A stretch of DNA of 63,014 bases, filler included, from Ministeria vibrans ATCC 50519 (Eukaryota > Protista > Filasterea): NCBI GenBank assembly GCA_943704425.1. It is 5 parts of 5 records of this genome, joined end to end, with 100 filler letters (N's around TTAATTAATTAA, not from the genome) between each part and the next. Parts side by side here need not be neighbours in the genome. Positions count along the whole stretch, not along the records: positions 30,253 to 60,100 come from CALSCP010002308.1; 4 more parts are not named here. One strand, written 5' to 3'. Both the position numbers and the translations under genes were made by a program. The notes under the pieces were generated by a model. The model did no database searches. It was given only the letters and a program-made list of their open reading frames with translations, and was not told the origin of the DNA. Below are positions 30,633 to 59,400 of the stretch, piece after piece (within the stretch, counting starts at the first letter, position 1; each line of letters begins with the position of its first letter).

Positions 30633-31062
30633 GTGTTGGACACAGCAATGAAGAATTGCGGTGCGGCCATGCACGACCATGTGTGCACACACACCGTCGT
30701 CGACGAACTCTTCAACGTCATTCAGGTATGTACAGTGATAGTTGGATTTTTTTTGTGTGTAACATTGCTTCAGACTGACTTTCTGTATCAATCAAGACTG
30801 GCAATGACCGAGTTCGCGAGCGAATTCTTGAGCTCCTGCAGCTGTGGGCGCACGCCTTTCGCAATGAGCCCACTCGCCACATCTTCCGCGACACCTGTGC
30901 TCAACTTCGTAGTCAAGGTAGCCAAATTATGATTATAGTTTTGTCAGAAAAGAAATTTACCTTTGGCTTTTTAGGCGTTTCGTTTCCGCCGCTCAAAGAA
31001 TCCGATGCAATGTTCAACACAGATACAGTAATAATTCATCTCTCATTCTCGTTTTTTGCACA

Positions 31063-31107
<45 letters not shown>

Positions 31108-31987
31108 TCTATCACTTTCTTCATTCTTCTTCTTCTTCCTCCTCCTCTCTCAATCAGTCTCTTTCGTTTTTTTTCCCTCTTTAACATTGTTCCTTCTTCT
31201 TCCTTTCTCTCCTTCTTCTCTGTCTCAGCCGCCAATGTGGCGCGATGCTCCATCGTGCGCCGTGTGCCACAACGACTTTTCTGTACTGACTCGTCGCAAG
31301 CACCACTGTCGCCACTGTGGCTCGGCCGTGTGCTATGCGTGTTCGGGAAAGCTATCGGCAGTTGTCAAGTATGGCTATGAAAAGCCAGTGCGCGTGTGTG
31401 ATCCGTGCTTTGCACAGCTCAACGGGAGAGGTAGTGACGCTGCTGCAGATCTGTCGACGAGCACTCCGCTCACGGCTGTCGTGGCCGGCGCCACCACGGG
31501 GGCTGCGTCAACTGCAAGTGCGGCCACGGTGGACCCACAGGTGCAGGAGCGTGAGCAGGACGAGTTGGAACAGGCTATTGCCCTGTCCCTCGTTGAAGAT
31601 GCTCAGGCTCGCGAGCGCCGGTCCACTAACATCCCTTCTAGTGCTGCCTCGCCTCACCACCAACACTACCCGCAACAGCAGTACCACCACCACAACCCGA
31701 CTGCATCGCCCCCGCCCCCCGCTACCGCCCCCTCCTACGCACCCGAGCGAGTCGACGATCCCGAGCTTGCGCGATATCTTGACCGAGACTACTGGGAGAA
31801 CGAGCGACGCAAGAGCGAGGCTGAGCGAGAACGACAGCTGCAACAACAACAAAAACAAGAACAACAACAGCAACAGGAGGAAAAACAGCGACGGGAGCAG
31901 CGGAAACGCGAACAACGACAACGCGAACGAGACCGTGAAGTACAAGAGCAGGAGGAACAGCGAGCACGACAGAAGGCGAAGGAGGAA

Positions 31988-32020
<33 letters not shown>

Positions 32021-32992
32021 ACTACTACTACTACTGCTGCTGCTGGTAGTAGTAGCACTGCTGCTATAGTCCCCGCTGCGTCTTCTGCATCCACGACTGT
32101 GAACACCGTTGGCCCATTCTCGGTGGTGTCGGGCGTGACGGAGGAGTCTACCGATCAAGAGGGGCAAGTGGTGGCCAACTTGCAAGGGGCGCTGCAACAG
32201 TTTGATGAACGACTTCATCGCGCCATGACAGCGGGACGGACGCTAGCAAGCGATACTGCATTGCGAACGCTGCGTGCTCAGCTAGACTCGCTCCACACAC
32301 AGCTGCTCGAACACATTGATAGGCGTGAGGGTACGCGCTTCAAGTACGATGTGGTGTGCAAGAAGACGGCTCAGATTGGCGAAATGCAAATTGCTTTGGG
32401 CCAAGCGCGCGTAGCCCACGCGGAACGAGTTGCAGCGATGCAGCGCGAGCAGGAAATGCTCCAAAGAATGCAACTTGAGCAAAAAATGGAACTGTTGCGA
32501 CAACAGGAGCGTGAACGTGCAGTCTTTGTCGCACCTTCTGTCGCCACTGCCACGCCTACCCCTGCCCCTCCTCCAACTGACTTTCACCCGTATCCTATTC
32601 ATCAAATGCAGCCGCAGCAACCATATCCCTTCCAATCACCACAAACAGCATCATCGTCAACAGCTACAGCAGCGGCAACGACGTCATACCCCGCCTTTGT
32701 GGGCCAGCCACCGCCACACCCTGCTTCAGTGGGGTCATTCTCTGCCACAGGTTCCCTGCCTTCCGCCAATCACATACCCTCTTCTGCTGCCGTACAGCAT
32801 CCGCAGGCGTTAGCGTTTCCTTCTGTTCCCGTAAGTGCAAGTTCAGGTGAAATGTGGTGGCCTAATTTTTTTTTGCTTGTTTTTTCTTGACAGAATGTAC
32901 CCCTTCCACCTCCAGCCCAAACGCGACAACAACAACAACAACAAGCACAGCAGCCGACCCCAAGTGTGCAAGGCGAACTCATATCGTTTTGA
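30633..32992 (+). CDS. HGS: ESCRT-0 subunit Hrs/Vps27 (VHS partial, FYVE, UIM, coiled coil, clathrin box); 5' end missing
   Basis: VHS VLDTAMKNCG...RERILELLQLWAHAF...FPPLKESDAMF; FYVE RRKHHCRHCG...VRVCDPC; UIM EQDELEQAIALSL; DPELARYLDRDYWE; QMQLEQKMELLRQ-type coil; C-terminal ELISF*. Confidence 0.95.
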
Positions 32993-38466: not shown

Positions 38467-39639
38467 ATGGGCGCACGGGCAAGCGTTGAGTTGCGAGACG
38501 CGGCTCGTGCGGGAAACGTTGAACTTGTCGATGGTGCACTGAAACGCGGCGGTAAGCCCAGCTGTGGCTTCAAGAATGGCAACACAGCCTTGCACTGGGC
38601 AAGTCATCGAGGTCACACGGCTGTGGTCGAGCGTCTTCTTGCGGCCAAGGCGAAGGTGTCGGTTGATGCCAAAAATAAATATGGTCGCGTACCGCTCGTC
38701 TGCGCCGCTCAGAATGGCCATGTCGAGTGCCTCGAGAGACTTCTCGATGCGGGCGCGAACCCCCGCATGCCCGCGGCCGATCAAAACGGCCGCACTGCGC
38801 TACACTCGGCAATCCGAAACCGCCATGTCGAGTCGGCCCGCCTGCTTCTGCGTCGCGGCGCCGATGCGACGGCTGTTGCCAAGAAGGGCTGGACACCTCT
38901 CCACTGCGCCGCTCGCGAAGGTCTCGCCGACCTCATCCCTCTCCTGCTTGAGCACGGCGCGCCCCTCGAAGCTCTCGACCACCACTCTTCAACCGCCCTC
39001 TACTACGCCGCCTTCAAGTAACTACACACTCTCTCTGTGTGTGTATGCGGTTTTTTTTTATGACTAAATAATATTCTTAGGGGTCATTTGGAATGTGTGG
39101 AAATACTGCTTCGAGCGGGGGCCAACGGGAATGCTGTTGGTCGCAACGGCTTTTCCGTCTTACAAGGCGCAATAGTTGCCGGGAAGCGCGACACCGCTGA
39201 GGCACTCATCTGCTGGGGCGCCAACCTGGCGTACAAGCATCGAGCGGGGCGCTCGGCATACGGACTGGCAGTGCACTGGCGACGTCCTGAATGTATCACA
39301 CTTCTTGAAGATACGGACCGTTGGGAGACGCTTGCCCATCGATGTTTGCAAGCGGTCAAACTGAACACGGAGCTGGCGGTGCAGGCGCGAGACACGACTC
39401 ACTTTCGCGTGTGCTACGGCGCAACCAGTGAGGTGGTAGAAGAAGGCCGTGCAGATGGGGAGCTTGAAAGCAATCCAATACGGCCAGCAGAAGGACAGTC
39501 TCGCCCAACGGACCTGAGCGAGGAGGATGTCGGGGAGGCGCGCGACGGCGACGATGGACCGTGCGAGGTGATGAGTCGCGCAAGTGCCGATGCTTTGCAG
39601 CAGCACCGCCTTCCTTCCTTCCCTCCAAGCCACAAGTAA
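38467..39639 (+). CDS. Ankyrin-repeat protein (about 7-8 repeats)
   Basis: GNTALHWAS, GRVPLVCAA, GRTALHSA, GWTPLHCAA, TALYYAA|KGHLECV; intron 39018-39080. Confidence 0.92.
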
Positions 39640-39819
39640 CACGTATTTAAATGTATCAACATATTTTTGAGTATAAATAAAAGTTCACCCCCTCTTTTTG
39701 TTAATAAATTTTTGTTTTGAATTTCACTTCCGACTTGACGATTTCGTTGAGACTTCGTCTAATTTGAGTAATTTCTATAAATTTAAAATAATTATTATTA
39801 TTTTGAGTGTATTGCACAG

Positions 39820-42789
<2,970 letters not shown>

Positions 42790-42928: not shown

Positions 42929-45900
42929 ATGAGCACGGAATCACTGCGAGAGCTCTCCGGGCGCTTCCTCGCCGGGAAGGTAGGCGGGGGCGCGACGGGC
43001 CCTTATGGCGCCATCCTCTGAAACCCCTGTAGGAAAAATTCAACGAGTCTCTTGGTCTTGTCGCCGACAAGGAGCTTCACCTCTTTAGTGGTACGGCGTT
43101 GTTGGGGTTGTGCAGCGCGCGATCAAAGGGGGGGAGAGAGTGTGTGTTTGTGTCGCCGACGCGTTTTCTCACGCTGTTGTTCATGCTGCCCTCCTCGCGC
43201 AGGCGAAGCGGCTCTTGCCTATGCCACCGGCGAAATGGCGTTGACCAAGAAGGACGCGCGGTCTATGCTGGACTTTGCCCTCTCCGAGGGTCTCATTCGT
43301 CTCTGTCACACTTGCGTACGTAAAAAGTGGCGCATTGCAATGACAAAGATTGTTATTGTCTTTTCTTTCCTCCTCCAGCCCTACCAGTCCGACTCGGACG
43401 ATTCCTTTGATGACGACAGCCACGACGACGAGGACAATGATGGGAATCTCCACGACGCTATGAGCGTTGGCAACAACTCAAACGTAAGCGATCTCACGAG
43501 GCGATATGTCAAGTTCTCCGAAAACGCGCATTACACTGTGTCAGCGGAAGAGAAGGTATGAATGCCTTTTTTTTCTTCTTCTTTTTACCCTTACCATTCT
43601 TTACTTACTAAAAATGTATAGCTGTACAAGAAGTACAACGAGGACGCGAGCATGATGCTACTGAATGACATTGAGTCGACGCTGAACACGGACGTCAGTG
43701 ACCAGGCTATGCTGCGCAGAGTCGCCGGCGATGATGATGATGACGACGACGATGATGATGATGATGATGATGACGACGATGAAGAACATGATGCCGATGA
43801 TCTCTCTTCTTGGGTAAGTATGCTATTGTAAGCTGACCAAAAATTTAACGATTGTACAATAGGACACCGTGTCGTCGGAGGAGATTGCGTCTGCCATTGT
43901 GCCGGAGTCATGGAAGGAAATGCTTGATGCGAACGAACAGAGCGCGCTGCGCATCGTCACTGTCACGGACGACGTCGTGCGCCAGCACGACGGTGAGTTT
44001 GTCATTGCAGAGTACGTTGCAATCCATCCTATAAAATTATTGTTTTGTTTTACTTTGGCAATTTACCCACCTCTCTTTGACTAGTCTCCTTGAGGAGTGC
44101 ATTCCAGCTGTGGTATTCATCAATGGCCGAAGCGGGGGCAAGATGGGGGCGCGAGTGTTGGAGGCGTTTCGCGAAGTGGGACTTCACGATTCACAACTGT
44201 GGGATTTGAGCAACGGCGGACCGGAGAAAGGACTGCGTGTGTTTGCGCACTGCAAGCACACGGTGGTGGCGTGCGGCGGGGACGGGACCGTCGGGTGGAT
44301 TCTGGCGACCATGGACACCATTGACTATGCGCAAGGGATGCGCCCTTCCGTCTCCATTCTCCCACTCGGCACAGGCAACGACCTCTCACGTGTCCTTAAC
44401 TGGGGTCCCTCGGTGCCCTCTCGTCCACCCCTTCCCACCGTTCTTCGTCGTCGTCTCATCAGTCTTATCTCTGCCCAATCGCTTCATCTTGATCGCTGGT
44501 CTCTTGCTCTCACCCCCGATCCCTTGCACAAGTCCATTGTCATGAACAACTACTTTTCAGTGGGCGTTGATGCTAAAATCGCTCTCAAGTTTCATCTCGC
44601 GCGCGAGGCCCATCCGGGTCGCTTCAAGAGGTACCCTCATCACACGAATCATTACGTGCTGTCAATCACACCCTCACGCCACACGTACTCACTCTACGTC
44701 TGTTGTGTTCAGTCAAATGGTCAACAAGATGTGGTACGGGACATTCAGCACTGCCATTATGGCTTCGTCCGGTACACTTCTTTCCTCTTGTGTTACACTC
44801 TCTTTGACCGACTCCGCTCTTCATTTGTGTAGCCTTGAAAGTGTTTCGACACAAACACCTCAATGAGTCACTGTCGTTGACAGTCGACGATGAACGCGTG
44901 CTCATTCCCAACGACATTGAGTCGATAATCGTGCTCAACATCTCTTCGTACATGGCGGGTGCCGACCTGTGGGGAACGCGCAAGGAAGATGCCTACACAG
45001 CGCCCTCCTTCAAGTGAGCCACCCTGCTTGCTGTCCCCAGCGTTGCTTTTGATGTTTTTGATGCTTATCTGTCTCCTCTGCATTGTGTGCTTTTAGTGAT
45101 GGATTGGTTGAAGTTGTGGGCGTGACAGGCGTGTCTCACCTTGCGCGCATCCAGGCTGGTGTGGGTCACGGAGTGCGTCTCGCACAGGGCAGCAAAGTTG
45201 CCATTGGGATCAACGCAGACGCTCGTCTTGCCATGCAGGTAGCTCTTTCTCTTTCTCTTCTCGTTTCTCACTCATTTCTCTCTATCACTTTGTTTTCTCT
45301 CTCTAATTATTTAAATTATTATTATTAATTTTATTATCTTATTATTATCTTGGGTATGTCTTCTTCTTCTTCTTCTTCTTCTTCTTCTTCTTCTTCTTCT
45401 TCTATTTTTTATTATTGATAAATAGGTTGTATTCTTCTTCTTCTTCTTGTTCTACTTATTCATTTTTTTCTGTATAATAGTGTGATGGGGAGCCATGGAA
45501 GCAACCGGCAACCACGATAACTATCACGCATCACAGTACATCGCCCATGGCTGTCGCTGCGCTCTCCGCCGCCGATTCTTCCAGTCACACTGGTCTCGGT
45601 CGTGGCGCCACTCGCGTCAAAAGTTTCCCGTCCATATCCTTTGCGTCAACACAACGAAAAATGCGCGGATCGCTCTGTGAAGGCAACGTTGAGTGCGGTA
45701 TGTCTATCGAAGATTTTTTTGGAACTGTTGATTTATTGCTGTGTACATTTTAGAGGAAACGGAATCTATATTGAAGTCATTGACGGACGAACGGCTCGAA
45801 GAGCTCACACAACTGATCCGACGCAATGTAAAGGCGCCTTCGCAAAAGACATCAGAGTGTGCAGTGTACGGCGAAGACATTGGTACGTTAAAAGGAATAA

Positions 45901-46136
45901 CAATTCCTCCACTCGTTAACACTTTCCGTCTCTATTTCAATGCAGTGGACTACTTGTTGATTGAGCTCAAGACATCGAACCGCTTTGCGTCGTTCTCTGT
46001 CGCGTCCAAGCTGTACATGTCCGGCTTCATTTCGCCCTTGTCCAAGCACATCAAGGCTTTTCGCGACGGTCGCATTCTCTATACCTTTCAATCGCCCCTT
46101 TCACGTTCCTCAATGTCTCTCAGTAAGTCCAAGTCC

Positions 46137-46219
<83 letters not shown>

Positions 46220-46257
46220 NNNNNNNNGTATTATTATGATTATTATTATTATTATTA

Positions 46258-46347
<90 letters not shown>

Positions 46348-46968
46348 TTATTAAAATAATAATAAATTTTATTATTAGTAGTCTTATTATTATTAGTCTT
46401 ATTATTATTCATTTTTCATTTTATTCATGATTATTATTGTTTTTATTTGTTGTCACAGGTGCTCGTGAGTCTTCAGGATGACGCTGCGAAGGTCTTCTCC
46501 TCGCGCAGTGCCCATCCTATCTTTAAACATGCTCCGTTGGTCTTTGTGGCCAATCGATCCAATGCCGTGCTGCGATTCGACGTGTTTGAACGGCGTGCTC
46601 GTCGGGTACTACACAACACTGCCCATAGGTTTCTTTCTAACATTTTTTGAAATGGATATGCTTCACTAGGTGTCGGGCTTGAAGAAGAAACACTGGGTGA
46701 TGATGGGACATGCACAAGTGCCATTCTCGTCGATCAAGTCACTGTCGCCGGGTCAAGAGATCTCGAAACAGCTCAAAGTAGTCTTCTGCGACCCGGATGG
46801 CATCTCCTGCGACATCCGCGCTCAGCTCAACACGACCCTTTCCATTGCCTGGTCTGGTGCAGGCATTACCGACGAGACCGGTCTTGCCAATGATCCGAAG
46901 CCTTTTGTGCCACAGGTAAGTAAACGCGCGCCACAAATATACACATACACACACATACACACCACAAA

Positions 46969-47007
<39 letters not shown>

Positions 47008-48468
47008 CAAAGTAGACACACGCACACGCACTTACTTACTTACTCACTCACTCTCACACACGCACACCACAAACACACACATACTCACTTTGTAACCGAT
47101 CTCGAAATCTAAAACTCGTTTTTTTTGACTCCACTGTACGCATGATCAGCGTCCTCCCAAAGGTGGCTTCAAGGGCGTCATCACAGCACTCTCCGAGGCC
47201 AATCACTGGGTCAATCCCTTTGAAAATGTCGTCGTGTGGGACGCACCTGCGTCCCCTGATGACCTCGACAGTGCCCTCAACCGCTTTTCCACCACCATCA
47301 CTGGTCGCTTTGAGTACTTTACAGCGCTTCTCGCCAACGAGAGCGTTGAGGTACGTTGATAAGGCGCAGTATACCTCGTTCGTTTTTCTCATTTTCCTTT
47401 CTTAGTGCTTCATTCAACGCAGCCAGTCTGTGTACACCGACGAGTGGATTTCACTAGGCGTCCACACCACCGACTCCAAAGGCCGTCTGTCCTTCCCCAT
47501 CACACACAAAGACCTTCCTCGCGATCCGCTCGCGCCCAACGACCTCTGGGGCCACTATCGCCTTCGCATGGTACACAGTAAACAAAAGGCAAATCCACTG
47601 CTCCTCTCACCGACTCCCCTCTCTCCTGGCCTCTCTGCACGTTTCTCTACACAGGTGGTGCAACACGACAACTCCATGAGTGGCGGACAACTTTTTGTAC
47701 TGCGTCGCGGCGTTCAGGCCATTGTCGTTGATCTTGATGGTACAATCACCGTCGGCGACACACAAGTTGTGACTCAGGTGCATATCACATTTCCTCTTCC
47801 ACCCATACAATAACCTTACACTTGCCTTCCTCGTCTCTTGTCTAGGCGGTGATTAATGAGAAACACGACATCAAGAAGCGCCGTGGCGGCCTAACCATGC
47901 TACGACTATTTGCCGCCAAGGGGTTCCTCCCCATCTACCTGTCGGGCCGCCAGGGCAGCTTCTACAACCTCACGCGTGACTGGCTCATTCGCCACTCATT
48001 TCCACCGGGCCCTATTCACCTGACACACTCACACAAGCCCACACTGCCCATCTATTCCTCTGTTGGTGTATTCAAGGTGAGAGAGCCCGTGCGTCTCAGC
48101 TGAAGCAAAATATTAATCTCTATGCGAAAATAGCTCAAGTACCTGCGCAACCTCGCCTCGCTTGGCGTCGAGGTGTTCGAGTGCTACGGCAACACTGGCT
48201 CAGACCTACGCGCATACACCGAATGTAAGCCCCTCGTACAAAAACAATATAAAATAAAAATGTGCCACACACGCACTTGTGCACTCACACTCACTCTCAT
48301 CTCTCAGTTGGAATGGACAAGGCTCATCTGTATCTGGTGGGCCCCCACAGTGGGTCCAAGGACACCGCCACGTGCGGTCGTAAGCACTTCTCTCTCGAGC
48401 ACCTTGCAAAGGTTGCCGCTCTTCCCGATCCCCCGATCAAAGCGCCCAATCTCTCTTTTGAATGGTGA
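42929..48468 (+). CDS. DEP-like + diacylglycerol kinase (DAGKc/DAGKa) + C2 + Nir/RdgB-type LNS2 HAD phosphatase fusion (about 22 exons)
   Basis: Hand-spliced in one frame: HLFSGEAALAY...LDFALSEGLI (DEP-like); VFINGRSGG, VACGGDGTVGW, PLGTGNDLSR, LDRW, MNNYFSVGVDA, LNISSYMAG, DGLVEV, MQCDGEPW (DGK); LRFDVFE...MGHAQVPF (C2); ANH...ITGRFEY...TDSKGRL...YRLRMVV...VVDLDGTIT, YLSGR, WLIRHSFPPG, YGNTGSD (LNS2). Each domain is well supported; continuity relies on a 20-nt microexon at 46124-46143. Confidence 0.8.
46140..46445. repeat. (GT)n followed by (TTA)n microsatellites, intronic, with an 8-N gap
   Basis: Seen directly. Confidence 0.92.
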
Positions 48469-50386: not shown

Positions 50387-53300
50387 CTCTCTAGCTCCGT
50401 TTCGTATGTGTGTGTACCTTTAGTTCCTTTGCCAGAGCGTGAAATTGACTGTAGCGACGTTGCACAACCTCTTCCGAACCGTCATCGTGAAACACACGAA
50501 TCTTGTACACGTAGTGTTTGCTGGGTGTTGTGATCTTCTCAATGTCAAACACGTCCACGTCGGACACACTTCGCTCGTAGGCGGCACTAGTAGCACGACT
50601 GGCACGCTCGTCGGCGGAAACAGTTAGGGAGGGCGCGGAGGGAGCAACAGGTACGACAGGAGACACGGTGTCGGAGCCAGCGGGAGACTCCGAAGAGGGC
50701 GCCATGGACGACATGCGTGACTTGGCGCGTTCTTTCTTGACACGACGCGGCGCCACAGGTGCGTCTTCGTCAGATGCCAAAACTGGTTCTGCGCTGGATA
50801 TGACAGGCACGCCCGGAGCTGGGCGGGTCGGCAGAGGAGCAGCGCTGCTTGTCGACGCCTCGACGGACGAAGACACACGCGACGGTTTGGGAGGCGGAGG
50901 CGCGCTAGCGGATGTGACCGCAGGTGGTGGTGGGCGTGCCGGTTGCACAGGTGCGTCCTTGAAATTTGCGTACACGGACGCTTCTTCGTACACAGTATCG
51001 CTGCCGGCCCCGTTTGTCTCCTCCAATGGCTTTGTCGGCTTTGGCGGTACACTTGCACCAGCACCCGCACCAGCCCCTGACACACTCGGCGCTGGGGGTC
51101 GCGGCGGTGGTGTCGACGACTTGCATGCACTCGACGCGGTGTCCTTGGCCGACTCGGTCGCTGATCGGGAGGGCTTGGCTGGTGGGATCTTCGTCGATGG
51201 TGAAGACGGCACAACAGTGGATGCAGCTGATGCGGGAGCAGGGGCAGGCTTAGACGAGGGAGCAGGCGTAGTAGACATGGGAGCAGGTTTCGCCAGTTGA
51301 GCCACCTGGGAGGTGGTCGATGTTATCGAAGATCCAGAGCGTGCAGGCTTGAGGGGAGGCGGTCCTGCTGCGGGTTTACTCTTGGGGGCAGCGGGACTCG
51401 AATTTGGCGTGGTGGCAACGCCAGACCATTTCGGGGGCGGCACGGCACTCTGTTTTGGTTTGATCACAAAAGCAGGCTTGCTTGCGGGTGGCGGGGGTTT
51501 CTTTGACTGGACCGGTGGAGGAGCAACGGCTTCTGTGGCAGCAGGCGATTTTTTCGTCACCGTCTCCACTGATGACGCAGCAGTGGTGGTCTCAGACACA
51601 CTTGCGCCGTGTGACTTGCCAACTACCGCCTCAAAGGCGTGGTCCTGGCTTGCGGCGTCGATGGCAGCAAAGAGAGCTGCCTTGGCCGCCTCCTGCTCGG
51701 GATCCGGTACGTACACTTTTCTGTCGGGAACTTGTGCAGCCGCACGTAAAGTTTCGACGTAGCTAACACGATTTTGATGAGAATCTGCGCGTGAGGGTGC
51801 AGACGAGAGTTGCTCCACGCGTGAGTTTTGCTGCTCGTCAATGGCCTGCATCACGGCAACCTTGGCCGACTCTTGTTCACGACCCTCGGCAGAGACGGAG
51901 CGACTGGCTGCAGGCTTGGTCTTGGGCAGCGTCGGTGGTGGTGGCAGTTTGGCCTTGGCCGGAGGTGGAACGGCCGCCGCTTGGACAGTGCGTTCCTGAC
52001 TGTCAGCGTCGATAGCGGCAAACAAGGCTGTGCGAGCGACGTCCTGTTCATCGTCGTGTTTCGTCACAGTAGATGTCTTCTTGGCAAGCGACGGGGGTGG
52101 AGCGGTGGCAATGAAACGTTTGGTAGTTCGTGGTGACGTCGGAGGCGACGCAAGGGTCGACGTGCGTTCGGCAGAGGCCGTGTCAATTGCCTGCAAAATT
52201 GCCTCTTTGGCATCAGCGTCGTTAGTGGGTAGTGGGGCAGAGTCATCGGGGGCGCTCGCCGGAGGCGCCGAGCCAAGTGACGCGGTGCGTTCGACCTCGA
52301 CGGCATCGATGGCAGCCATGACAGCCGCACGCGCAACATCCTGTTCGCTGTCTGTGACGGTGGCGGCATAAATTGAAAGGGTTTTGTTGGCGAGGGACGG
52401 TGGGGGAGCAGTGGCAATAAAGCGACGCGAGTTGCGCGGTGAGGTTGGAGGGGAGGCAAGGGACGCGGTGCGCTCGGCTGAAGCGTTTTCAATGGCCTGC
52501 ATGACTGCCTCTTTGGCGTTTTCGCCATCGACGACGGGCGTGACGAGACCATCGTCGGACGAGACGGCAGAGGGAGCCGAGCCGAGCGACGAGGTGCGAG
52601 CGGACTCGGAGGCGTCAATGGCCGCCAGAAGCGCCTCCTTAGCCATGTCTTGCGACGGCGACCGTTTCACCGCGTTCATTTTGTTTTGGGTTGTTGTGAC
52701 AAGAAAGCGGCGAGACATGGTTGGCGAGGTAACATGCGACGTTGGTGGCGACGAAAGCGACACCGTCTTGGCTGACTCGGAAGCGTCAATGGCGGCAAAT
52801 AGGGCCGCTTTAACATCCTCCTCTGTTTCATAATTGTTCGCACCCGACTTCGTATCATCACCAATGTCTGTTTGCGCTGGGGCATGCGACAGACGGTGGG
52901 TACTTCGCTCGACTTCGCGTGTGATGGCATCCAAAAGGGCCTGCTTGGCGGCCTCTTGTTCGGCGCGATCATGCACCTTGGTACCCTCATCCACTGATGG
53001 AGCACTCGTGGACGGAGGCATTACCGCTGCCCGGCGACGATCTTCTTCTGCCGACTCAATGGCGGCCATGAGCGCTTCCTTCGCTGAGTCTGAGTCGGCG
53101 GCGACCTCTGACTCGGCCGTGGTGCTCGACTCTGCCTGGTGCTTGGGCGGTGCGTCCGTAATACTGGAAGTTCGCTCGTGGGTGGCCGCATCGATGGCAG
53201 CCAGCACACGATCGCGCACCATTTCTTGCTCCACATCTCGTTTCTTTGATGGTAACACAATAGTCGGACGCACAATCGTAGGCGCAGGGGCCGACGAGAC

Positions 53301-54211
53301 GGGGCGAGGTGGGAGCTTGGATGCTGCTGGTGATGATGAAGATGCTGCAGTTTCAGGGGAAGCAACATCAGCATCAGCAGCAACAGTAGTAGTAGTAGCA
53401 ACAGCAGCAGAAGCAGCAGCAGAAGCAGCAGCAGCTGGTGGCGTTGTTCTCGTTGTTGTCGTTGAGATGGAGGTGTCCTTAGTTGTCGCGTCGACGGCAA
53501 CGCTCTGAACACCTGTGCTCTCAGTAATGGCAACGGAGGTGTCTGTCAAAGAAGAGGAAGAGCTAGGGACGACAGTCGTGGCAGCAGTGGCTGGAGCCGG
53601 TTTGCTTGCTGAACTTGCAGGTCGCACTGGTGGAGGCGCACTAGGTCGCGTCGCGTGGAGTCCAACAGCGTTCGCCAAAGCTGACACTCCTGTGGGGGCA
53701 GCGGGACGAACAATAGAAGGCGTGGGCGCACTCGTGGTCGACGAGACGGCTGGTGCCGACGCTGCAGGAGAAGAAAAGACAAGATATGTTTACAAAGAAA
53801 GATGGAAAAAAGATGAAAAAAAAAACGTATACGTCACAGAATCTTCTGTTACGATCACAGACAGATACAGATCCCCATTACCTTTTGTGGACGTCGCTGT
53901 TTCAGTGGCAGAGGTCGCTACAGGCGGTGCTGGATGAAGAAGGAGAGAGACGAAGCCGAAGAAAAAGGTGAGAAGACGACAAAACGCATTCAGCACAGAG
54001 CAGGAGGCGATAGAGAGAGAGAGAGAGAGAGAGAGAGAAGGAGACCACAGCGGGCTAGGTGGAGGTTCAAGTGGAACACGTTGGCATCGACGACGGTCGA
54101 AGGAGAAGGGACGTCGAAGCAAATGCGGTTTGGTTTACATTTCAGAGTCGAAGATGAATCATCGGTGCCAGGTACGATCCACACTGCCTTGGGTCCCTTC
54201 TGAGCAGACAT
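48584..54211 (-). CDS. Large adaptor: Pro/Ser/Thr-rich region with 11 helical repeats + PX domain + C-terminal PTB domain
   Basis: PX: IEKITTPSKHYVYKIRV...RRYSQFH...PDKILFGRS..REVAEKR (Tks/PI3K-C2-like). PTB-like: FEVGLLG...REAVSAI...IAFLIS|...AFALI...FEAHVFRT...VVALIAQVCNAVF. Exons splice in frame from ATG 54211 to TGA 48584. Confidence 0.8.
49730..49850. repeat. (AGAC/AAAC)n tetranucleotide microsatellite, intronic
   Basis: Seen directly. Confidence 0.9.
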
Positions 54212-55153: not shown

Positions 55154-58100
55154 CTAAAAGAGCTGCGAGCGATTCTTCTTGAATTGACGAAGCGACGCGA
55201 GAATCTCCTTGGCTGTGTCGCCGACCGTCTTGCACGAGTCGTCACTGGCAATGGACAGTTTGAGGCGCATCACGTTCTTGTAGGCGAGCAGGTGGAGGCG
55301 CTTGGCCTCGGGTAGGTGTCCAAGAGTGTCGTGTATTTGGGCGGCCAGCGACACAATTTTGCAGCCCCAGACACGCTCGTATGTGGTGCCGGAAATCTCG
55401 TCCTCGTCGGGCAGCGTGGCGAAGCGTTCGAGCACGTTGAGCGCGCGATTGATCAGTGCCTTGCGCTTACTCGCGCTCTTCTCCATGTCGGCGCGCCGCA
55501 ACAGACACTCGCTGTAGTTGAAGCGAGCCAGAAGAAGGGTGTGGTGCATAGGGGCAGTGGCAAAGTGGACGCTAATGCGCTCCTCGAGAATCGCCTCGAA
55601 CACCAGCAATGCCTTGTTGTGCTCGTTTTGCTTCACGAGTGCCAGAGCGTGCGTCTGCTTGGAGGAGTGCGCCAGGTCGCACAAACTGCTGCTTTCCGCG
55701 CCCAAACGTCGTGCCTCGTCCTGCAGCGCAAACGAACCTTCGAGAAGGTCTAGTGCGCGCTCCTGACTCTTCTTGTCTGTGCCAAAGCCCGGCAGCCGAA
55801 TAAGAGCATCGGCAAACTCGTGGCGCAGCACGGCCAACGGAATGTGCGATGGGGATTCACGATGGAGTCGCTCTTGCAACTCAAGCACATCTTGAAAGAG
55901 GGGTATCGCCTCGGTAAGTCGGCCTGATTTGGCAGTAGCCCTGGCAATGGCATGCTTGGCGGAAGCAATGGAGCTGTGATCGGGTTTTCCGGCGTGTAGC
56001 ACCTCAAACGTGCGAAGCACATCCTTGTAGACCACAATAGCGTCGTCGTAACGCGCCAAGTGCACGTAGACATCGCCCAGGTTGAGCTTGGTCGAGGCCA
56101 CGGAGGGGTGGTGTGGGTAGCCCTGGTGAAAGCTCATCTTCACCTTGAGCGACTCGACGTAGAGCGACAGTGACTTGGCGTAGTTGCCCAGGCGCATGTG
56201 AACGTTGGCCAGGCCATGCTTGGCGGTGGCCACATGCAGACGACTCACGTCACAGCAGCGAAGGATGCGCAGTGATTCGGTGTACATCGCCAGAGCTTCC
56301 TGGTCGCGAGCAAGACGCACGTACACATTGGCCAGCGTGTACTTGGCATTGGCCATAGGCAAATTGTCCGGGTGGTGTGCGTAGATGCGCTCCAGCATAC
56401 CCACCACACGCTCAATCATGGACAGCGCCTCGCTCAGCTGCGACATATTCGCCATAAGATTGGCGCGCACGTAGAGCGTGTCGGCAACGCGCGGGTGGCA
56501 GTCTAGCGCGTCTGCATGAAGCGTGTCGATGATTCGCTGCGACTCCTCGACCAGCGTCATTGACGCACCGTAATCTCCTTTTTCGCTGAGCACACGACCC
56601 ATCTCGCGTTTGGTCTCGGCAATCGCCGAATGATTCGGCTGCTCGTCATACAGCTGAAATTGCAGGTTGAGCGCTTCGGCGAGTCGCGTTAGAGCCTCGT
56701 CAAATTTGCCAAGGTTCGCGAGGGCCGTCGAGTGAAACAAAATGGCCTCAATAAGACGCGCAGAGTTCACATCAAACAAGGTACGCGCCATTTTCTCCGC
56801 ACGCGCCGCCTGATCCACTACCAGCTCTGTGTCGCCGGCGCAACCCGTGACGCGAGCACACATCATGAGTGCCTCCACGCGTATCCAGTGATTCACTTCG
56901 CGCTCCAGCACTTCACCTATTACCTCCATGAGGTGTTCGTGCGATGTCAATGCCTCGTTGTAGAGCACCTTTGACGCGTAGCACTCGGTAAGACTCAGGC
57001 ATGTGGTCATGTGCACCAGTGGCCACAGTTCAATGGAGGCACGTTTGATGCACTCGCACATGAGTGCCGCAGCACGATTGCACACTGTGCGCGTGTCCGT
57101 CAAATGCAACATGGCACACACGCGTGCCCATTCGAGAAAAGCGCGTTCGCCGTGACGATCACATTGCTCCAATATATCGAGAGCACGCTCGCGCATTTTC
57201 ACGGCGTCGCCAAGCTTTCCCATTGTCTCACATCGAATCGCGTCGACAAGGTACACACGAGCACGATGTACCGAGTGCTCATCGGTCAGAGATGTAGCGC
57301 GAGCCAACAAGCGCCCCGCGTGTTCCATGTCGCAGCGCAATTTCAGGCCAAGCTGTGCACAGTGAGCGAGGGCCTTAACACGGTGCACCCTGTCGATCGA
57401 AAGAGTGCCATTCTCACGACCAACTCCCTCTCCCACTTCCTCCTCCTCGCGATCCCACACATCAATTGCCATTTGAAAAACACGCGACGCCAGTCGATCG
57501 TCACGGTTGCCCAAAAGGGAGACTGCCTTGAAGAAGAGTTCGCGGGCGGTCGACGAGTCCTCTTGCGGTTGTTGTTGGTCACACGGAGTGCCCAGCACTG
57601 CAAGGAGCCCCGACGCGGTCTGGTCGCCCTCCGTGCTGCCCAAACAGTAGTTGAGAAAAGACAGAATGTCGGCATTGATCTCGGGCAAATGCACACGGGC
57701 GTTGGCACTGTCGAGACGCGCCTGGTGTGCCTCCGTTATTGACGCAAGATTTCCCAAGACATCACACATGCTCTTTTTGGCCGACCAGCCTTTGGGGTCC
57801 GACATGATCAGGTACAGGAGGGTAGCACCCACGGAGTAGACGTCCATCCATGCGGACTTGGAATTGGCCTGTGCCTCCGGTTGGAATGAGGTGTCAGTGT
57901 CTAAAAAAAAAAAAAAAAGAACAACAACAGAGCAAAATGAGAATGCGTTAGGATTTTGGCAAGACCACATTTTCACCTGATTGCTGCTCTACGCCAATGT
58001 TGGTGATCATCGCACGAAGTTGGGTGCGGTAAGAGCCATCTGAGCTGGTGAGCGTCTCGGGGGCAATGAGGACGTTCGCTGGCGACACGTTGAGCAGACG

Positions 58101-59400
58101 GATGCCTCGTGCATGGAGGAAGGCAAGTGCCTCGGCGAGATCTTGCGCTAGCGAGAGCACCAGCTGGGTGGCTGCCGAGCGGTTGGGAACGCCTGAAAAT
58201 GGGCTGTGCATTGGCTCTTTGGGAGCTTGGACGGTCTCACCACGGTCGATGCGGAGCCAGTCCGTCATATCCTGTGGGCAAGCCTCGGGATCCACATTGT
58301 AGTTGTGTTTGTCGTCGGTGTCGGAGCGATGACGAAACAACGACGACGTCTCGCAATGACGTTTGAGCGAACGTTGAGTGTGTACCTTGTCAAGGAGCAA
58401 ATGGACGCGCTCCTGATTGGTAAAGGTTGCAATGCACGTCACGACATTGCGATGGCGTGCCAGACTGAGCCAGCGACGGGCCTGCGAGAGGGTAATGTCG
58501 GTGAGCACCATGGCCAGACGAAGCCCCGTTTGTGCGTCTTCACACGATAAGACAAGCTCCGAGTCCGCTATAGAACAACAACAACAACAAAAAAAAAAAA
58601 AGCCATTAATTTTATCAATTTTTTGCAGACGATAATGGCTTTACTTTCTCGTGCGAGTGATCGGACACGATAGCGTCGAGGTTCGACGGCTTCGCCGTAG
58701 GAAAAGGCAAGACAGTGAAGAGGACCTGGTTCACCACAGTGGATGGCCTGACGCAGGAAGGCGATGGGGATCCGTGTCATGTTGGCTATCGTGAGATCCG
58801 CTGCGAGTCCAAACTGGACACGCTCGTGTGAGTCGTGCACGGCCATGCGAAAGTCCGTAAACCACGTGCGGAGAGTACGCTCCTCTGCTACTCTCTCGGA
58901 CGCGTCGTCGGCGTCGTCAGCCCCCTCATCTTGCTGGCCACAGAGCTTGGCAAAATAGTCGCTCTGCACAGAGTGCAAGTGCCACTTCCCCGACGCGGGC
59001 CATGCCGCTTGCATGCTCGAGTCGCCCCAGTGGAGCACTGCATCCACGAGGGATCTCTCCTCCCAGGTCGTCTCGTCTGGCTGGAAACACGCATTATTTC
59101 AAAGTCGTGCGACATTTTCAGACGAATATCTTTCTTTTGTTTCTGATTTTCTTGGCGGCTTACCAGAATACCAAACAGCATTTCGGCACGAAAGAGACGT
59201 CTTCGAAGCACATTGTTCGAGCACAGCTGAACAGCGTACGGGGTGTCGTTTTCGCCTAAAAACGAGCGAATGAGATACGTTCTGATATGATTTTGCGCTC
59301 TCAAGACGCATTGTGGGGTACGCATGATGATCTGCATTAGCATGTGCGGACTCGCGCGAGCATGGTGTGATTGTGGACTCAACAAGCGCGAGGTGAACAT
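55154..59400 (-). CDS. N-terminal unknown domain + pseudokinase + long TPR array (kinesin-light-chain/TPR_12-like), 4 exons
   Basis: Kinase fold (HRNVV, LAEALAFLHARGIRLLNVSPANVLI, ITNIG, FQPE, DVYSVG) lacking VAIK Lys, HRD and DFG; about 42-44-aa repeats such as HPSVASTKLNLGDVYVHLARYDDAIVVYKDVL; introns splice in frame. Confidence 0.8.

What the first reader, a model, noticed from the sequence alone, without database searches (positions are those of the whole stretch)
42929..48468. Candidate bifunctional DAG kinase / phosphatidate phosphatase: opposing lipid-signal activities in one polypeptide
Seen: exons can be spliced with GT-AG introns in one frame from ATG 42929 to TGA 48468. They encode DEP-like, acidic linker, DGK catalytic and accessory domains (GGDGT at 44275-44289, GTGND, QCDGEPW), C2 and an LNS2 HAD domain (DLDGT at 47730-47744, SGR, K, GNTGSD). 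Established: DGKs convert DAG to PA; lipin/Pah1 LNS2 domains with DxDxT convert PA to DAG; the five animal DGK types carry C1/EF/PH/SAM/ankyrin/RA domains, not LNS2. Inference: a single-chain DAG/PA rheostat, logically like PFK-2/FBPase-2, targeted to membranes by DEP and C2; alternatively the LNS2 domain senses the PA product. I do not know a described protein with this architecture.
Basis: partly seen in the sequence, partly recalled or inferred. Interest (0 to 1): 0.92.

Follow-up and report, generated by a model that had tools for sequence, protein, structure and literature searches.

The report
DAG kinase fused to lipin-like phosphatase
A protist gene joins a diacylglycerol kinase to a Nir2/lipin-type phosphatidic-acid module that keeps every phosphatase residue; the same fusion occurs in Capsaspora, two other holozoans and an amoeba, and I found no paper on it.

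Summary
The exons tile a complete, motif-intact DGK catalytic and accessory domain, then a DEP domain, a C2-like region, and a beta-sandwich plus HAD module. That last module is the PITPNM/Nir2 type of LNS2, not the lipin type.

Four predicted proteins have the same order of domains and align collinearly to both halves of the locus. They come from Chromosphaera, Capsaspora, Corallochytrium and Balamuthia. In Capsaspora, residues 73-1542 lie in one uninterrupted open frame, so the fusion there needs no splicing.

All four HAD motifs are invariant in 43 relatives and present here. Animal Nir2, a phosphatidic-acid (PA) sensor, has lost the nucleophile.

Weak points:
- The exon 13/14 junction crosses an N run and is out of frame with the best splice sites. 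About 30 residues of the C2 N-terminus are missing, so an exon is probably hidden in the gap.
- Exon 6/7 needs an atypical donor.
- The N-terminal DEP is not supported, and there is no C1 domain.
- No reads could be laid.

Verdict: a real, conserved but unstudied DGK variant. Dual kinase/phosphatase activity is plausible and untested.

The parts
42929..43996 (+). Exons 1-6 (42929-42979, 43033-43090, 43203-43315, 43379-43555, 43622-43813, 43863-43996). This is a putative N-terminal region with acidic D/E runs. It is the least certain part of the model.
   Evidence: There are no Pfam hits. There is no similarity to the homologs' N-termini and no C1 domain. The DEP profile gives only E 0.15 on exon 3. 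The exon 6 donor must be GTTTGT at 43997 to stay in frame.
44085..44630 (+). Exon 7: DGK catalytic domain and the start of the accessory domain. GGDGT is at 44275-44289 and GTGND at 44368-44382.
   Evidence: Pfam gives DAGK_cat E 4.5e-20 and DAGK_acc E 3.3e-10. tblastn identity to the four fused homologs is 43-50%.
44713..45238 (+). Exons 8-10 (44713-44771, 44833-45013, 45097-45238): the rest of the DGK accessory domain.
   Evidence: Pfam DAGK_acc matches profile positions 52-99 and 109-153 on exons 9 and 10. The exons tile the domain collinearly with homologs and with DGK-theta.
45481..45697 (+). Exon 11: the end of the DGK domain (CDGEPW at 45481-45498), then a Ser/Thr-rich linker.
45754..46122 (+). 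Exons 12-13: the central DEP domain. The interval 45883-45945 is in frame and free of stops, so it may be coding rather than an intron.
   Evidence: Pfam DEP gives E 4e-4 on exon 13, matching profile positions 25-72. The family DEP profile gives E 1.6e-07. Chromosphaera residues 601-689 align at 45777-46091.
46123..46458 (+). Intron 13 with (GT)n, an N run at 46220-46227 and (ATT)n. This is the unresolved junction, and a short exon is probably hidden here.
   Evidence: The frame enumeration is and the N run. The first 30 or so positions of the C2 profile have no counterpart in the window.
46459..46915 (+). Exons 14-15 (46459-46605, 46670-46915): a C2-like region. Its end (a DPKPF motif) is the conserved link to the next module.
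   Evidence: Against the profile of the homologs' C2 region, exon 14 gives E 1.5e-4 (profile 46-78) and exon 15 gives 6.8e-6 (profile 89-154); control exons are negative. There is no Pfam hit.
47150..47350 (+). Exon 16: a conserved N-terminal extension of the lipin-like module (GGFKG..SEANH at 47162-47206).
   Evidence: blastp gives E 2.4e-11 to Chromosphaera 958-1035 and 9.5e-09 to Corallochytrium. That it is an amphipathic membrane helix is inferred from Nir1 and lipin.
47406..47570 (+). Exon 17: the beta-sandwich (Ig-like) domain that precedes the HAD core.
   Evidence: Pfam PITM1-3 beta-sandwich gives E 0.016, below the cut-off. It aligns collinearly with all homologs.
47655..47777 (+). 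Exon 18: HAD motif I, DLDGT at 47730-47744.
   Evidence: D, D and T are invariant in the 43-sequence alignment.
47846..48076 (+). Exon 19: the HAD core, with motif II (SGR, 47942-47950) and the motif III Lys (48074-48076).
   Evidence: Pfam LNS2_PITM1-3 gives E 2.7e-08, 34.3 bits against a cut-off of 27.7. It is 68% identical to Chromosphaera and Pigoraptor.
48134..48224 (+). Exon 20: HAD motif IV, GNTGSD at 48188-48205.
   Evidence: G, N and D are invariant.
48308..48468 (+). Exon 21: the C-terminus, ending in a conserved Trp, then stop TGA at 48466-48468.

Best explanation
The locus is one multi-exon gene of a conserved, unstudied family found in unicellular Holozoa and Amoebozoa. Its order of parts is: a variable N-terminus, a diacylglycerol kinase (catalytic plus accessory domain), a DEP domain, a C2 domain, and a lipin-like module (extension helix, beta-sandwich, HAD core) of the PITPNM/Nir2 type.

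Shown:
- The domain order.
- Its conservation in four other species.
- Intact DGK motifs.
- All four HAD phosphatase motifs intact.

Inferred:
- The kinase makes phosphatidic acid (PA) from DAG.
- The HAD module binds PA in the pocket that Nir2 uses, and, having the Asp nucleophile that Nir2 lacks, hydrolyses it back to DAG.
- DEP, C2 and the extension helix hold the protein on acidic membranes.
- The protein would then set the local DAG/PA ratio, with the two activities presumably regulated in opposite directions. How they are regulated is unknown.
For: Domains on single exons:
- Pfam detects DAGK_cat, DAGK_acc, DEP and LNS2_PITM1-3.

The same architecture elsewhere:
- It occurs in Chromosphaera P0002, Capsaspora P0136, Corallochytrium P0137 and Balamuthia P0144.
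- All four align collinearly to both halves of the window.
- Capsaspora residues 73-1542 lie in one open frame, L001 3830-8239.

Both catalytic centres look intact:
- Window exons 7-11 tile a complete DGK with its hallmark motifs.
- D-x-D-x-T, G-R, K and G-N-x-x-x-D are invariant in 43 relatives, and the window has DLDGT, SGR, K and GNTGSD.
- Nir2 has SIDGS at motif I and Ser for the motif IV Asn, and is reported to be a PA sensor.

Fold:
- A homolog model (pLDDT 85) matches the Nir2 C-terminal domain bound to PA at TM 0.83-0.87, and then lipin Pah2.

Expression:
- Nine RNA-like runs from three studies hold 0.51-0.58 of the sampled 31-mers of 44085-48468.
- Exon-only words of both halves together predict 0.543. 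Either half alone predicts 0.26-0.29.
Against: - No enzyme activity was tested.
- The exon 13/14 junction is out of frame with the best splice sites and crosses an N run.
- A kinase and a phosphatase for the same lipid pair in one chain make a futile cycle unless regulated, and no regulatory element was identified.
- The nearest solved relative, Nir2, is a sensor and not an enzyme.
- The structure model is of a Pigoraptor homolog, not of the window protein.
Confidence: 0.5

Rival explanations
1. The gene and fusion are the same, but the lipin-like module works mainly as a PA sensor or tether, as in Nir2. It would bind the kinase's product and keep the enzyme on PA-rich membrane (positive feedback), or report PA for product inhibition, with little or no turnover.
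For: The closest solved relative by sequence and fold is the Nir2 C-terminal domain crystallised with PA. The Nir LNS2 domains are established PA-binding modules. A sensor would avoid a futile cycle.
Against: Both motif I Asp residues, the motif III Lys and the motif IV Asn and Asp are invariant in 43 relatives, from myxobacteria to holozoans. That is the pattern expected under selection for catalysis. Nir2 and Nir1, the known sensors, have lost exactly these residues.
Confidence: 0.27
2. The HAD module is an active phosphatase, but its substrate is not PA. It could be lyso-PA, DAG pyrophosphate, ceramide-1-phosphate, a phosphoinositide or a phosphoprotein. In that case the two activities do not oppose each other.
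For: Only generic HAD and acid-phosphatase neighbours appear when the core exon is compared by language-model features. Weak Pfam matches to Acid_phosphat_B, HAD_PNKP and APP1_cat occur in the homologs. Myxobacterial and algal relatives have no DGK.
Against: Both solved relatives of this fold, lipin/Pah and Nir2, act on or bind PA in the same pocket. Fusion to a PA-producing enzyme in five lineages points to PA.
Confidence: 0.13
3. In this genome the two halves are separate neighbouring genes, a fission of the ancestral fusion, or the model is an artefact of joining across an assembly gap.
For: The best donor and acceptor at exon 13/14 are out of frame, and the intron holds an N run. DGK-less DEP-C2-LNS2 proteins exist in Balamuthia and in transcriptomes.
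Against: - In the DGK-less relatives the DEP domain belongs to the LNS2 protein. Here the DEP lies upstream of the gap, spliced in frame to the DGK exons.
- Exon 14 has no usable start codon ahead of the C2 region.
- Only 336 bases separate exons 13 and 14.
- The C2 profile lacks about 30 N-terminal residues in the window, which fits a hidden exon rather than a gene boundary.
- RNA-like runs hold the words of both halves in the expected proportion.
Confidence: 0.07

Closest known systems
Capsaspora owczarzaki 'diacylglycerol kinase 1' (P0136, 1542 aa), Chromosphaera perkinsii Nk52_evm1s223 (P0002), Corallochytrium Clim_evm3s80 (P0137), and Balamuthia mandrillaris 'Diacylglycerol kinase' (P0144)
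   Same: They share the order DAGK_cat, DAGK_acc, DEP, beta-sandwich and LNS2_PITM, with a Pfam C2 hit between DEP and beta-sandwich in three of the four (none in Corallochytrium). They are 43-50% identical in the DGK and 45-68% in the HAD core. The HAD motifs are intact.
   Different: Three of them carry a C1 domain and a significant N-terminal DEP. The window gene shows neither. These are automatic annotations, and I found no functional study.
PITPNM1/Nir2 C-terminal LNS2 domain (PDB 9jtz, 9jz1, 9jzp) and PILS-Nir1
   Same: They share the beta-sandwich plus HAD fold and the PA pocket. The profile E-value is 1.8e-59 and the fold TM-score 0.83-0.87. There is also an N-terminal extension helix.
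   Different: Nir2 has SIDGS for DxDxT and Ser for the motif IV Asn, and it binds PA without hydrolysing it. It sits behind PITP, FFAT and DDHD domains, not behind a kinase.
Lipin/Pah phosphatidate phosphatases (Tetrahymena Pah2: PDB 6tzy, 7lhk, 9d13)
   Same: They share the Ig-like plus HAD fold, the DxDxT nucleophile, and Mg2+-dependent PA hydrolysis as the family function.
   Different: The sequence relation is distant (E about 1e-12, 17-19% identity). The window shows no N-LIP/C-LIP arrangement, and lipins are not fused to a kinase.
Animal type V DGK (theta), type I DGKs and plant DGK1/2
   Same: They are the nearest non-fused relatives of the DGK region, at 40-45% identity with the same catalytic and accessory motifs.
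   Different: They carry C1, RA/PH or EF-hand domains. None carries DEP, C2 or LNS2 (Pfam column).
Bifunctional kinase/phosphatase enzymes: PFK-2/FBPase-2 and PPIP5K/Vip1 (named from general knowledge, not tested here)
   Same: The logic is the same: opposing kinase and phosphatase for one metabolite pair in a single chain.
   Different: The folds and substrates are unrelated. Reciprocal regulation is established for those enzymes and is unknown here.

Membership tests
Eukaryotic diacylglycerol kinase | DAGK_cat domain with the Gly-rich GGDG loop | tested here: met
   Pfam gives E 4.5e-20 on exon 7. GGDGT is at 44275-44289.
Eukaryotic diacylglycerol kinase | DAGK_acc accessory domain, complete through the DGEPW end | tested here: met
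   Profile positions 1-29, 52-99 and 109-153 match on exons 7, 9 and 10. Exons 8 and 11 fill the remaining positions in the alignment.
Eukaryotic diacylglycerol kinase | C1 domain(s) N-terminal of the catalytic domain (typical, not universal) | tested here: not met
   There is no Pfam hit on exons 3-6 (exons 1-2 are too short to scan) and no tblastn match to the homologs' C1 regions. The 5' exons are uncertain, and an N run lies at 42370-42379 upstream.
PITPNM-type LNS2 (PF24694 plus PF24695) | LNS2_PITM1-3 HAD core above the Pfam cut-off | tested here: met
   Exon 19 alone scores 34.3 bits against 27.7. The homologs score 72-92 bits.
PITPNM-type LNS2 (PF24694 plus PF24695) | A preceding beta-sandwich domain | tested here: inconclusive
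   Exon 17 scores 15.9 bits, below the 27.7 cut-off. It aligns collinearly with the homologs' beta-sandwich.
PITPNM-type LNS2 (PF24694 plus PF24695) | The Nir2 C-terminal-domain fold | tested here: inconclusive
   This was tested on the Pigoraptor homolog P0003 (68% identical in exon 19), not on the window protein. That model gives TM 0.83-0.87 to 9jtz, 9jz1 and 9jzp. The joined window protein was not folded.
HAD phosphatase (catalytically competent) | Motif I DxDxT, motif II S/T, motif III K, motif IV (G)NxxxD | tested here: met
   DLDGT, SGR, K and GNTGSD are at the aligned columns. These columns are invariant in 43 relatives. Activity itself cannot be tested with these tools.
Lipin/Pah1 phosphatidate phosphatase | LNS2 (PF08235) above cut-off, together with an N-LIP region | tested here: not met
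   PF08235 reaches only E 0.11 on exon 18. In full-length homologs it is just above cut-off (32.5-50.8 bits against 32.3), and always below PF24694. No N-LIP hit appears in any Pfam scan.
DEP-domain proteins | DEP domain | tested here: met
Central DEP: Pfam gives 20.6 bits on the half-domain exon 13, below the 32.7 cut-off. The family profile gives E 1.6e-07, and there is a collinear match to the homologs' DEP.
C2-domain proteins | A C2 beta-sandwich | tested here: inconclusive
   There is no Pfam hit on exons 14 or 15. The family profile gives 10.5 and 14.9 bits, collinear, with negative controls. The N-terminal third is absent from the window.

The most novel reading that the evidence does not exclude
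The fusion is an ancestral amorphean single-chain DAG/PA switch in which both centres are active and reciprocally controlled. The animal Nir1-3 PA-sensing LNS2 domain would then descend from this catalytically active lineage by loss of the nucleophile, so a signalling enzyme became a lipid sensor on the way to animals.
Probability: 0.25. Interest if true: 0.8.

Novelty: new variant of a known kind. Interest (0 to 1): 0.62.

Why it matters
DAG and PA are opposing second messengers, and in studied organisms separate proteins interconvert them. A conserved protein carrying both a DGK and a catalytically intact relative of the Nir2 PA sensor would be a new way to set the DAG/PA ratio at a membrane.

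It would also provide an active outgroup for understanding how Nir2 and Nir1 became PA sensors. Capsaspora, where the whole protein is one open frame, would be a practical system for testing this.

Tried and rejected
- **Read laying.** There is therefore no read-level evidence for splicing or transcript ends. Those places were not sent to any search tool afterwards and were masked in local scripts.
- All later work used coordinates only.
- **The joined protein.** The spliced protein was never assembled, searched or folded. Every search used single exons by reference, or public homologs.
- **Metagenome scan.** The scan with exon 15 gave 403 pattern matches, none confirmed.
- **Same-organism proteins.** I looked for proteins from this organism among the hits. 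None aligned above about 70% to the window apart from an 84-aa genomic fragment.
- **ESM Atlas.** Exon 19 returned only generic HAD and acid-phosphatase neighbours below 0.85.
- **PDB search with the DGK exon.** It found only bacterial YegS/DgkB-type kinases, which does not help with DGK type.
- **C1 domain or conserved N-terminus.** A search upstream of 44085 found nothing beyond acidic low-complexity matches.
- **Literature.** Seven full-text searches found no description of a DGK-LNS2 protein.
- **Rejected reading.** That the LNS2 module is lipin-type: it is much closer to Nir2.

Full report
**What is in the sequence**

The piece is eukaryotic. It has short GT-AG introns, many microsatellites and neighbouring multi-exon genes.

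From ATG 42929 to TGA 48466-48468 I could place 21 + strand exons.
- GGDGT at 44275-44289 and DLDGT at 47730-47744.
- GTGND at 44368-44382, CDGEPW at 45481-45498, SGR at 47942-47950 and GNTGSD at 48188-48205.

Every search used single exons by reference, or public homologs.

**Domains on single exons**
- Exon 7 carries DAGK_cat (E 4.5e-20) and the start of DAGK_acc.
- Exons 9 and 10 carry the rest of DAGK_acc.
- Exon 13 carries the C-terminal two-thirds of a DEP domain (E 4e-4).
- Exon 19 alone passes Pfam's cut-off for LNS2_PITM1-3 (34.3 against 27.7 bits).
- Exon 17 weakly matches the PITM beta-sandwich.
- Exon 18 holds motif I.

In an alignment with homologs and with DGK-theta, exons 7-11 tile a complete DGK with its hallmark motifs. 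The only departure I saw is a Pro-to-Ser change in the NIPSY motif.

**Is the fusion real?**

A search of 1.84 billion representatives with exon 19 found a 1293-aa Chromosphaera perkinsii protein that is 68% identical. Pfam reads it as DEP, C1, DAGK_cat, DAGK_acc, DEP, C2, beta-sandwich and LNS2_PITM.

Searching with its C-terminal region found the same architecture in three more species:
- Capsaspora owczarzaki, filed as 'diacylglycerol kinase 1' (1542 aa).
- Corallochytrium limacisporum (1322 aa).
- The amoebozoan Balamuthia mandrillaris (1158 aa).

All four align collinearly to the window: DGK at 44083-45241, DEP at 45777-46091 and the C-terminal module at 47153-48465.

In the Capsaspora genome, residues 73-1542 lie in one uninterrupted open frame, L001 3830-8239. 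The DGK-to-LNS2 fusion there does not depend on any splicing model.

For this organism there is indirect expression evidence. Nine RNA-like runs from three studies hold 0.51-0.58 of the sampled 31-mers of 44085-48468, while the DNA runs hold 0.95-0.96. My exon model predicts 0.543 if both halves are expressed and spliced. It predicts 0.26-0.29 for either half alone. This shows both halves are expressed. It does not show that they share one mRNA.

**Weak points of the model**

1. Exon 13/14.
   - The strong donor GTAAGT at 46123 is phase 1 and the strong acceptor CAG before 46459 is phase 0.
   - In-frame pairs need AT-rich acceptors or donors inside (GT)n.
   - The intron holds an N run at 46220-46227.
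   - A profile of the homologs' C2 region matches exon 14 (profile 46-78) and exon 15 (profile 89-154), with control exons negative. The first 30 or so profile positions have no counterpart.
   - The simplest reading is that a short exon, of length 2 mod 3, lies in the unsequenced gap. This is an inference.
2. Exon 6/7 is in frame only with an atypical GTTTGT donor.
3. The interval 45883-45945 is in frame and stop-free. By the Chromosphaera alignment it may be partly coding.
It is supported only by homology. Exon 15 ends in the conserved DPKPF-type motif, and in Pigoraptor, Chromosphaera and Capsaspora that motif runs straight into the GGFKG..SEANH segment of exon 16.
5. The N-terminal exons have no detectable domain.

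**What the C-terminal module is**

A profile of 43 relatives hits the solved Nir2 (PITPNM1) C-terminal domain at E 1.8e-59 and lipin/Pah2 at about 1e-12.

An AlphaFold model of the Pigoraptor homolog (pLDDT 85) matches the Nir2 domain crystallised with PA at TM 0.83-0.87, and then Tetrahymena Pah2.

Nir1 and Nir2 bind PA without hydrolysing it and have lost the catalytic Asp (PMC12419160; PMC12582312). The alignment shows SIDGS at motif I and Ser at the motif IV Asn in Nir2.

In the present family the following columns are invariant across 43 sequences: both motif I Asp residues and the Thr, the G-R of motif II, the motif III Lys, and G, N and D of motif IV. Those sequences include the fused proteins, DGK-less DEP-LNS2 proteins, green-algal proteins and myxobacterial proteins. 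The window has all of these residues. This is the pattern expected of an active HAD phosphatase.

**Mechanism**

Shown: an intact DGK, a DEP, a C2-like region and a lipin-like module with a complete catalytic set, in a conserved order.

Inferred: the kinase converts DAG to PA. The HAD module, using the PA pocket seen in Nir2 and lipin, converts PA back to DAG. DEP, C2 and the extension helix provide membrane binding.

I put this at 0.5. The rivals are:
- A Nir2-like sensor role: 0.27.
- Another phospho-substrate: 0.13.
- Two separate genes in this genome: 0.07.

**Comparison and novelty**

The DGK part is closest to type V (theta), type I and plant DGKs, none of which carries DEP, C2 or LNS2.

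The architecture is visible in public databases under automatic names. Seven full-text searches found no paper that describes or tests it.

I file it as a new variant of a known kind. Both parts belong to known families. Their fusion, with a catalytically intact Nir2-type module, is unstudied. It is conserved in unicellular Holozoa and Amoebozoa, and I did not see it among animal hits.

The source organism was not identified. The best matches are ichthyosporean and other unicellular holozoans, and a marine polyA metatranscriptome holds part of the locus.

**Limits**

- Those places were not sent to any search tool afterwards and were masked in local scripts.

Noticed in passing
L001:3830-8239 (Capsaspora owczarzaki KE346372.1): The Capsaspora ortholog encodes residues 73-1542 in a single open frame, covering C1, DGK, DEP, C2, beta-sandwich and LNS2. 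That makes it a convenient construct for biochemistry.
   Followed up: yes
P0155, P0156 (Myxococcota) and P0138, P0139, P0010, P0142 (green algae): Beta-sandwich plus LNS2_PITM proteins with both motif I Asp residues and the other HAD motifs conserved exist without any DGK. They occur in myxobacteria (with long low-complexity N-termini) and as roughly 800-aa proteins in green algae. The Nir2-type module is therefore much older and wider than animals.
   Followed up: partly
P0019, P0022 (Balamuthia), P0050, P0147: DGK-less DEP(-C2)-beta-sandwich-LNS2 proteins coexist with the fused form in Balamuthia. DEP-C2-LNS2 looks like a mobile cassette.
   Followed up: partly
window 50394-53687 (- strand): This is a 1098-aa open frame of low complexity with no Pfam hit. 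By eye it has about ten copies of an AKEAL-AAIDA-type motif and a PX-like C-terminal end.
   Followed up: partly
window 30929-32887 (+ strand): This is an Hrs/Vps27-like gene with FYVE (E 2.7e-17) and Hrs_helical (E 7.5e-14). It has long Gln/Glu-rich and Ala/Thr runs.
   Followed up: partly
window 55157-58511 (- strand): A 940-aa single-frame TPR protein (TPR_12, NPHP3-like) is preceded on the same strand by a weak protein-kinase-like piece at 57951-58511.
   Followed up: partly
window 40571-42390 (+ strand) and 38467-39640 (+ strand): Phosphoglucomutase exons lie directly upstream of the DGK gene, and an ankyrin-repeat gene lies further upstream.
   Followed up: partly
window 42370-42379 and 46220-46227: Short N runs sit inside microsatellites ((ATT)n, (GT)n). 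They look like assembly gaps and may hide sequence, including an exon of the gene studied here.
   Followed up: partly
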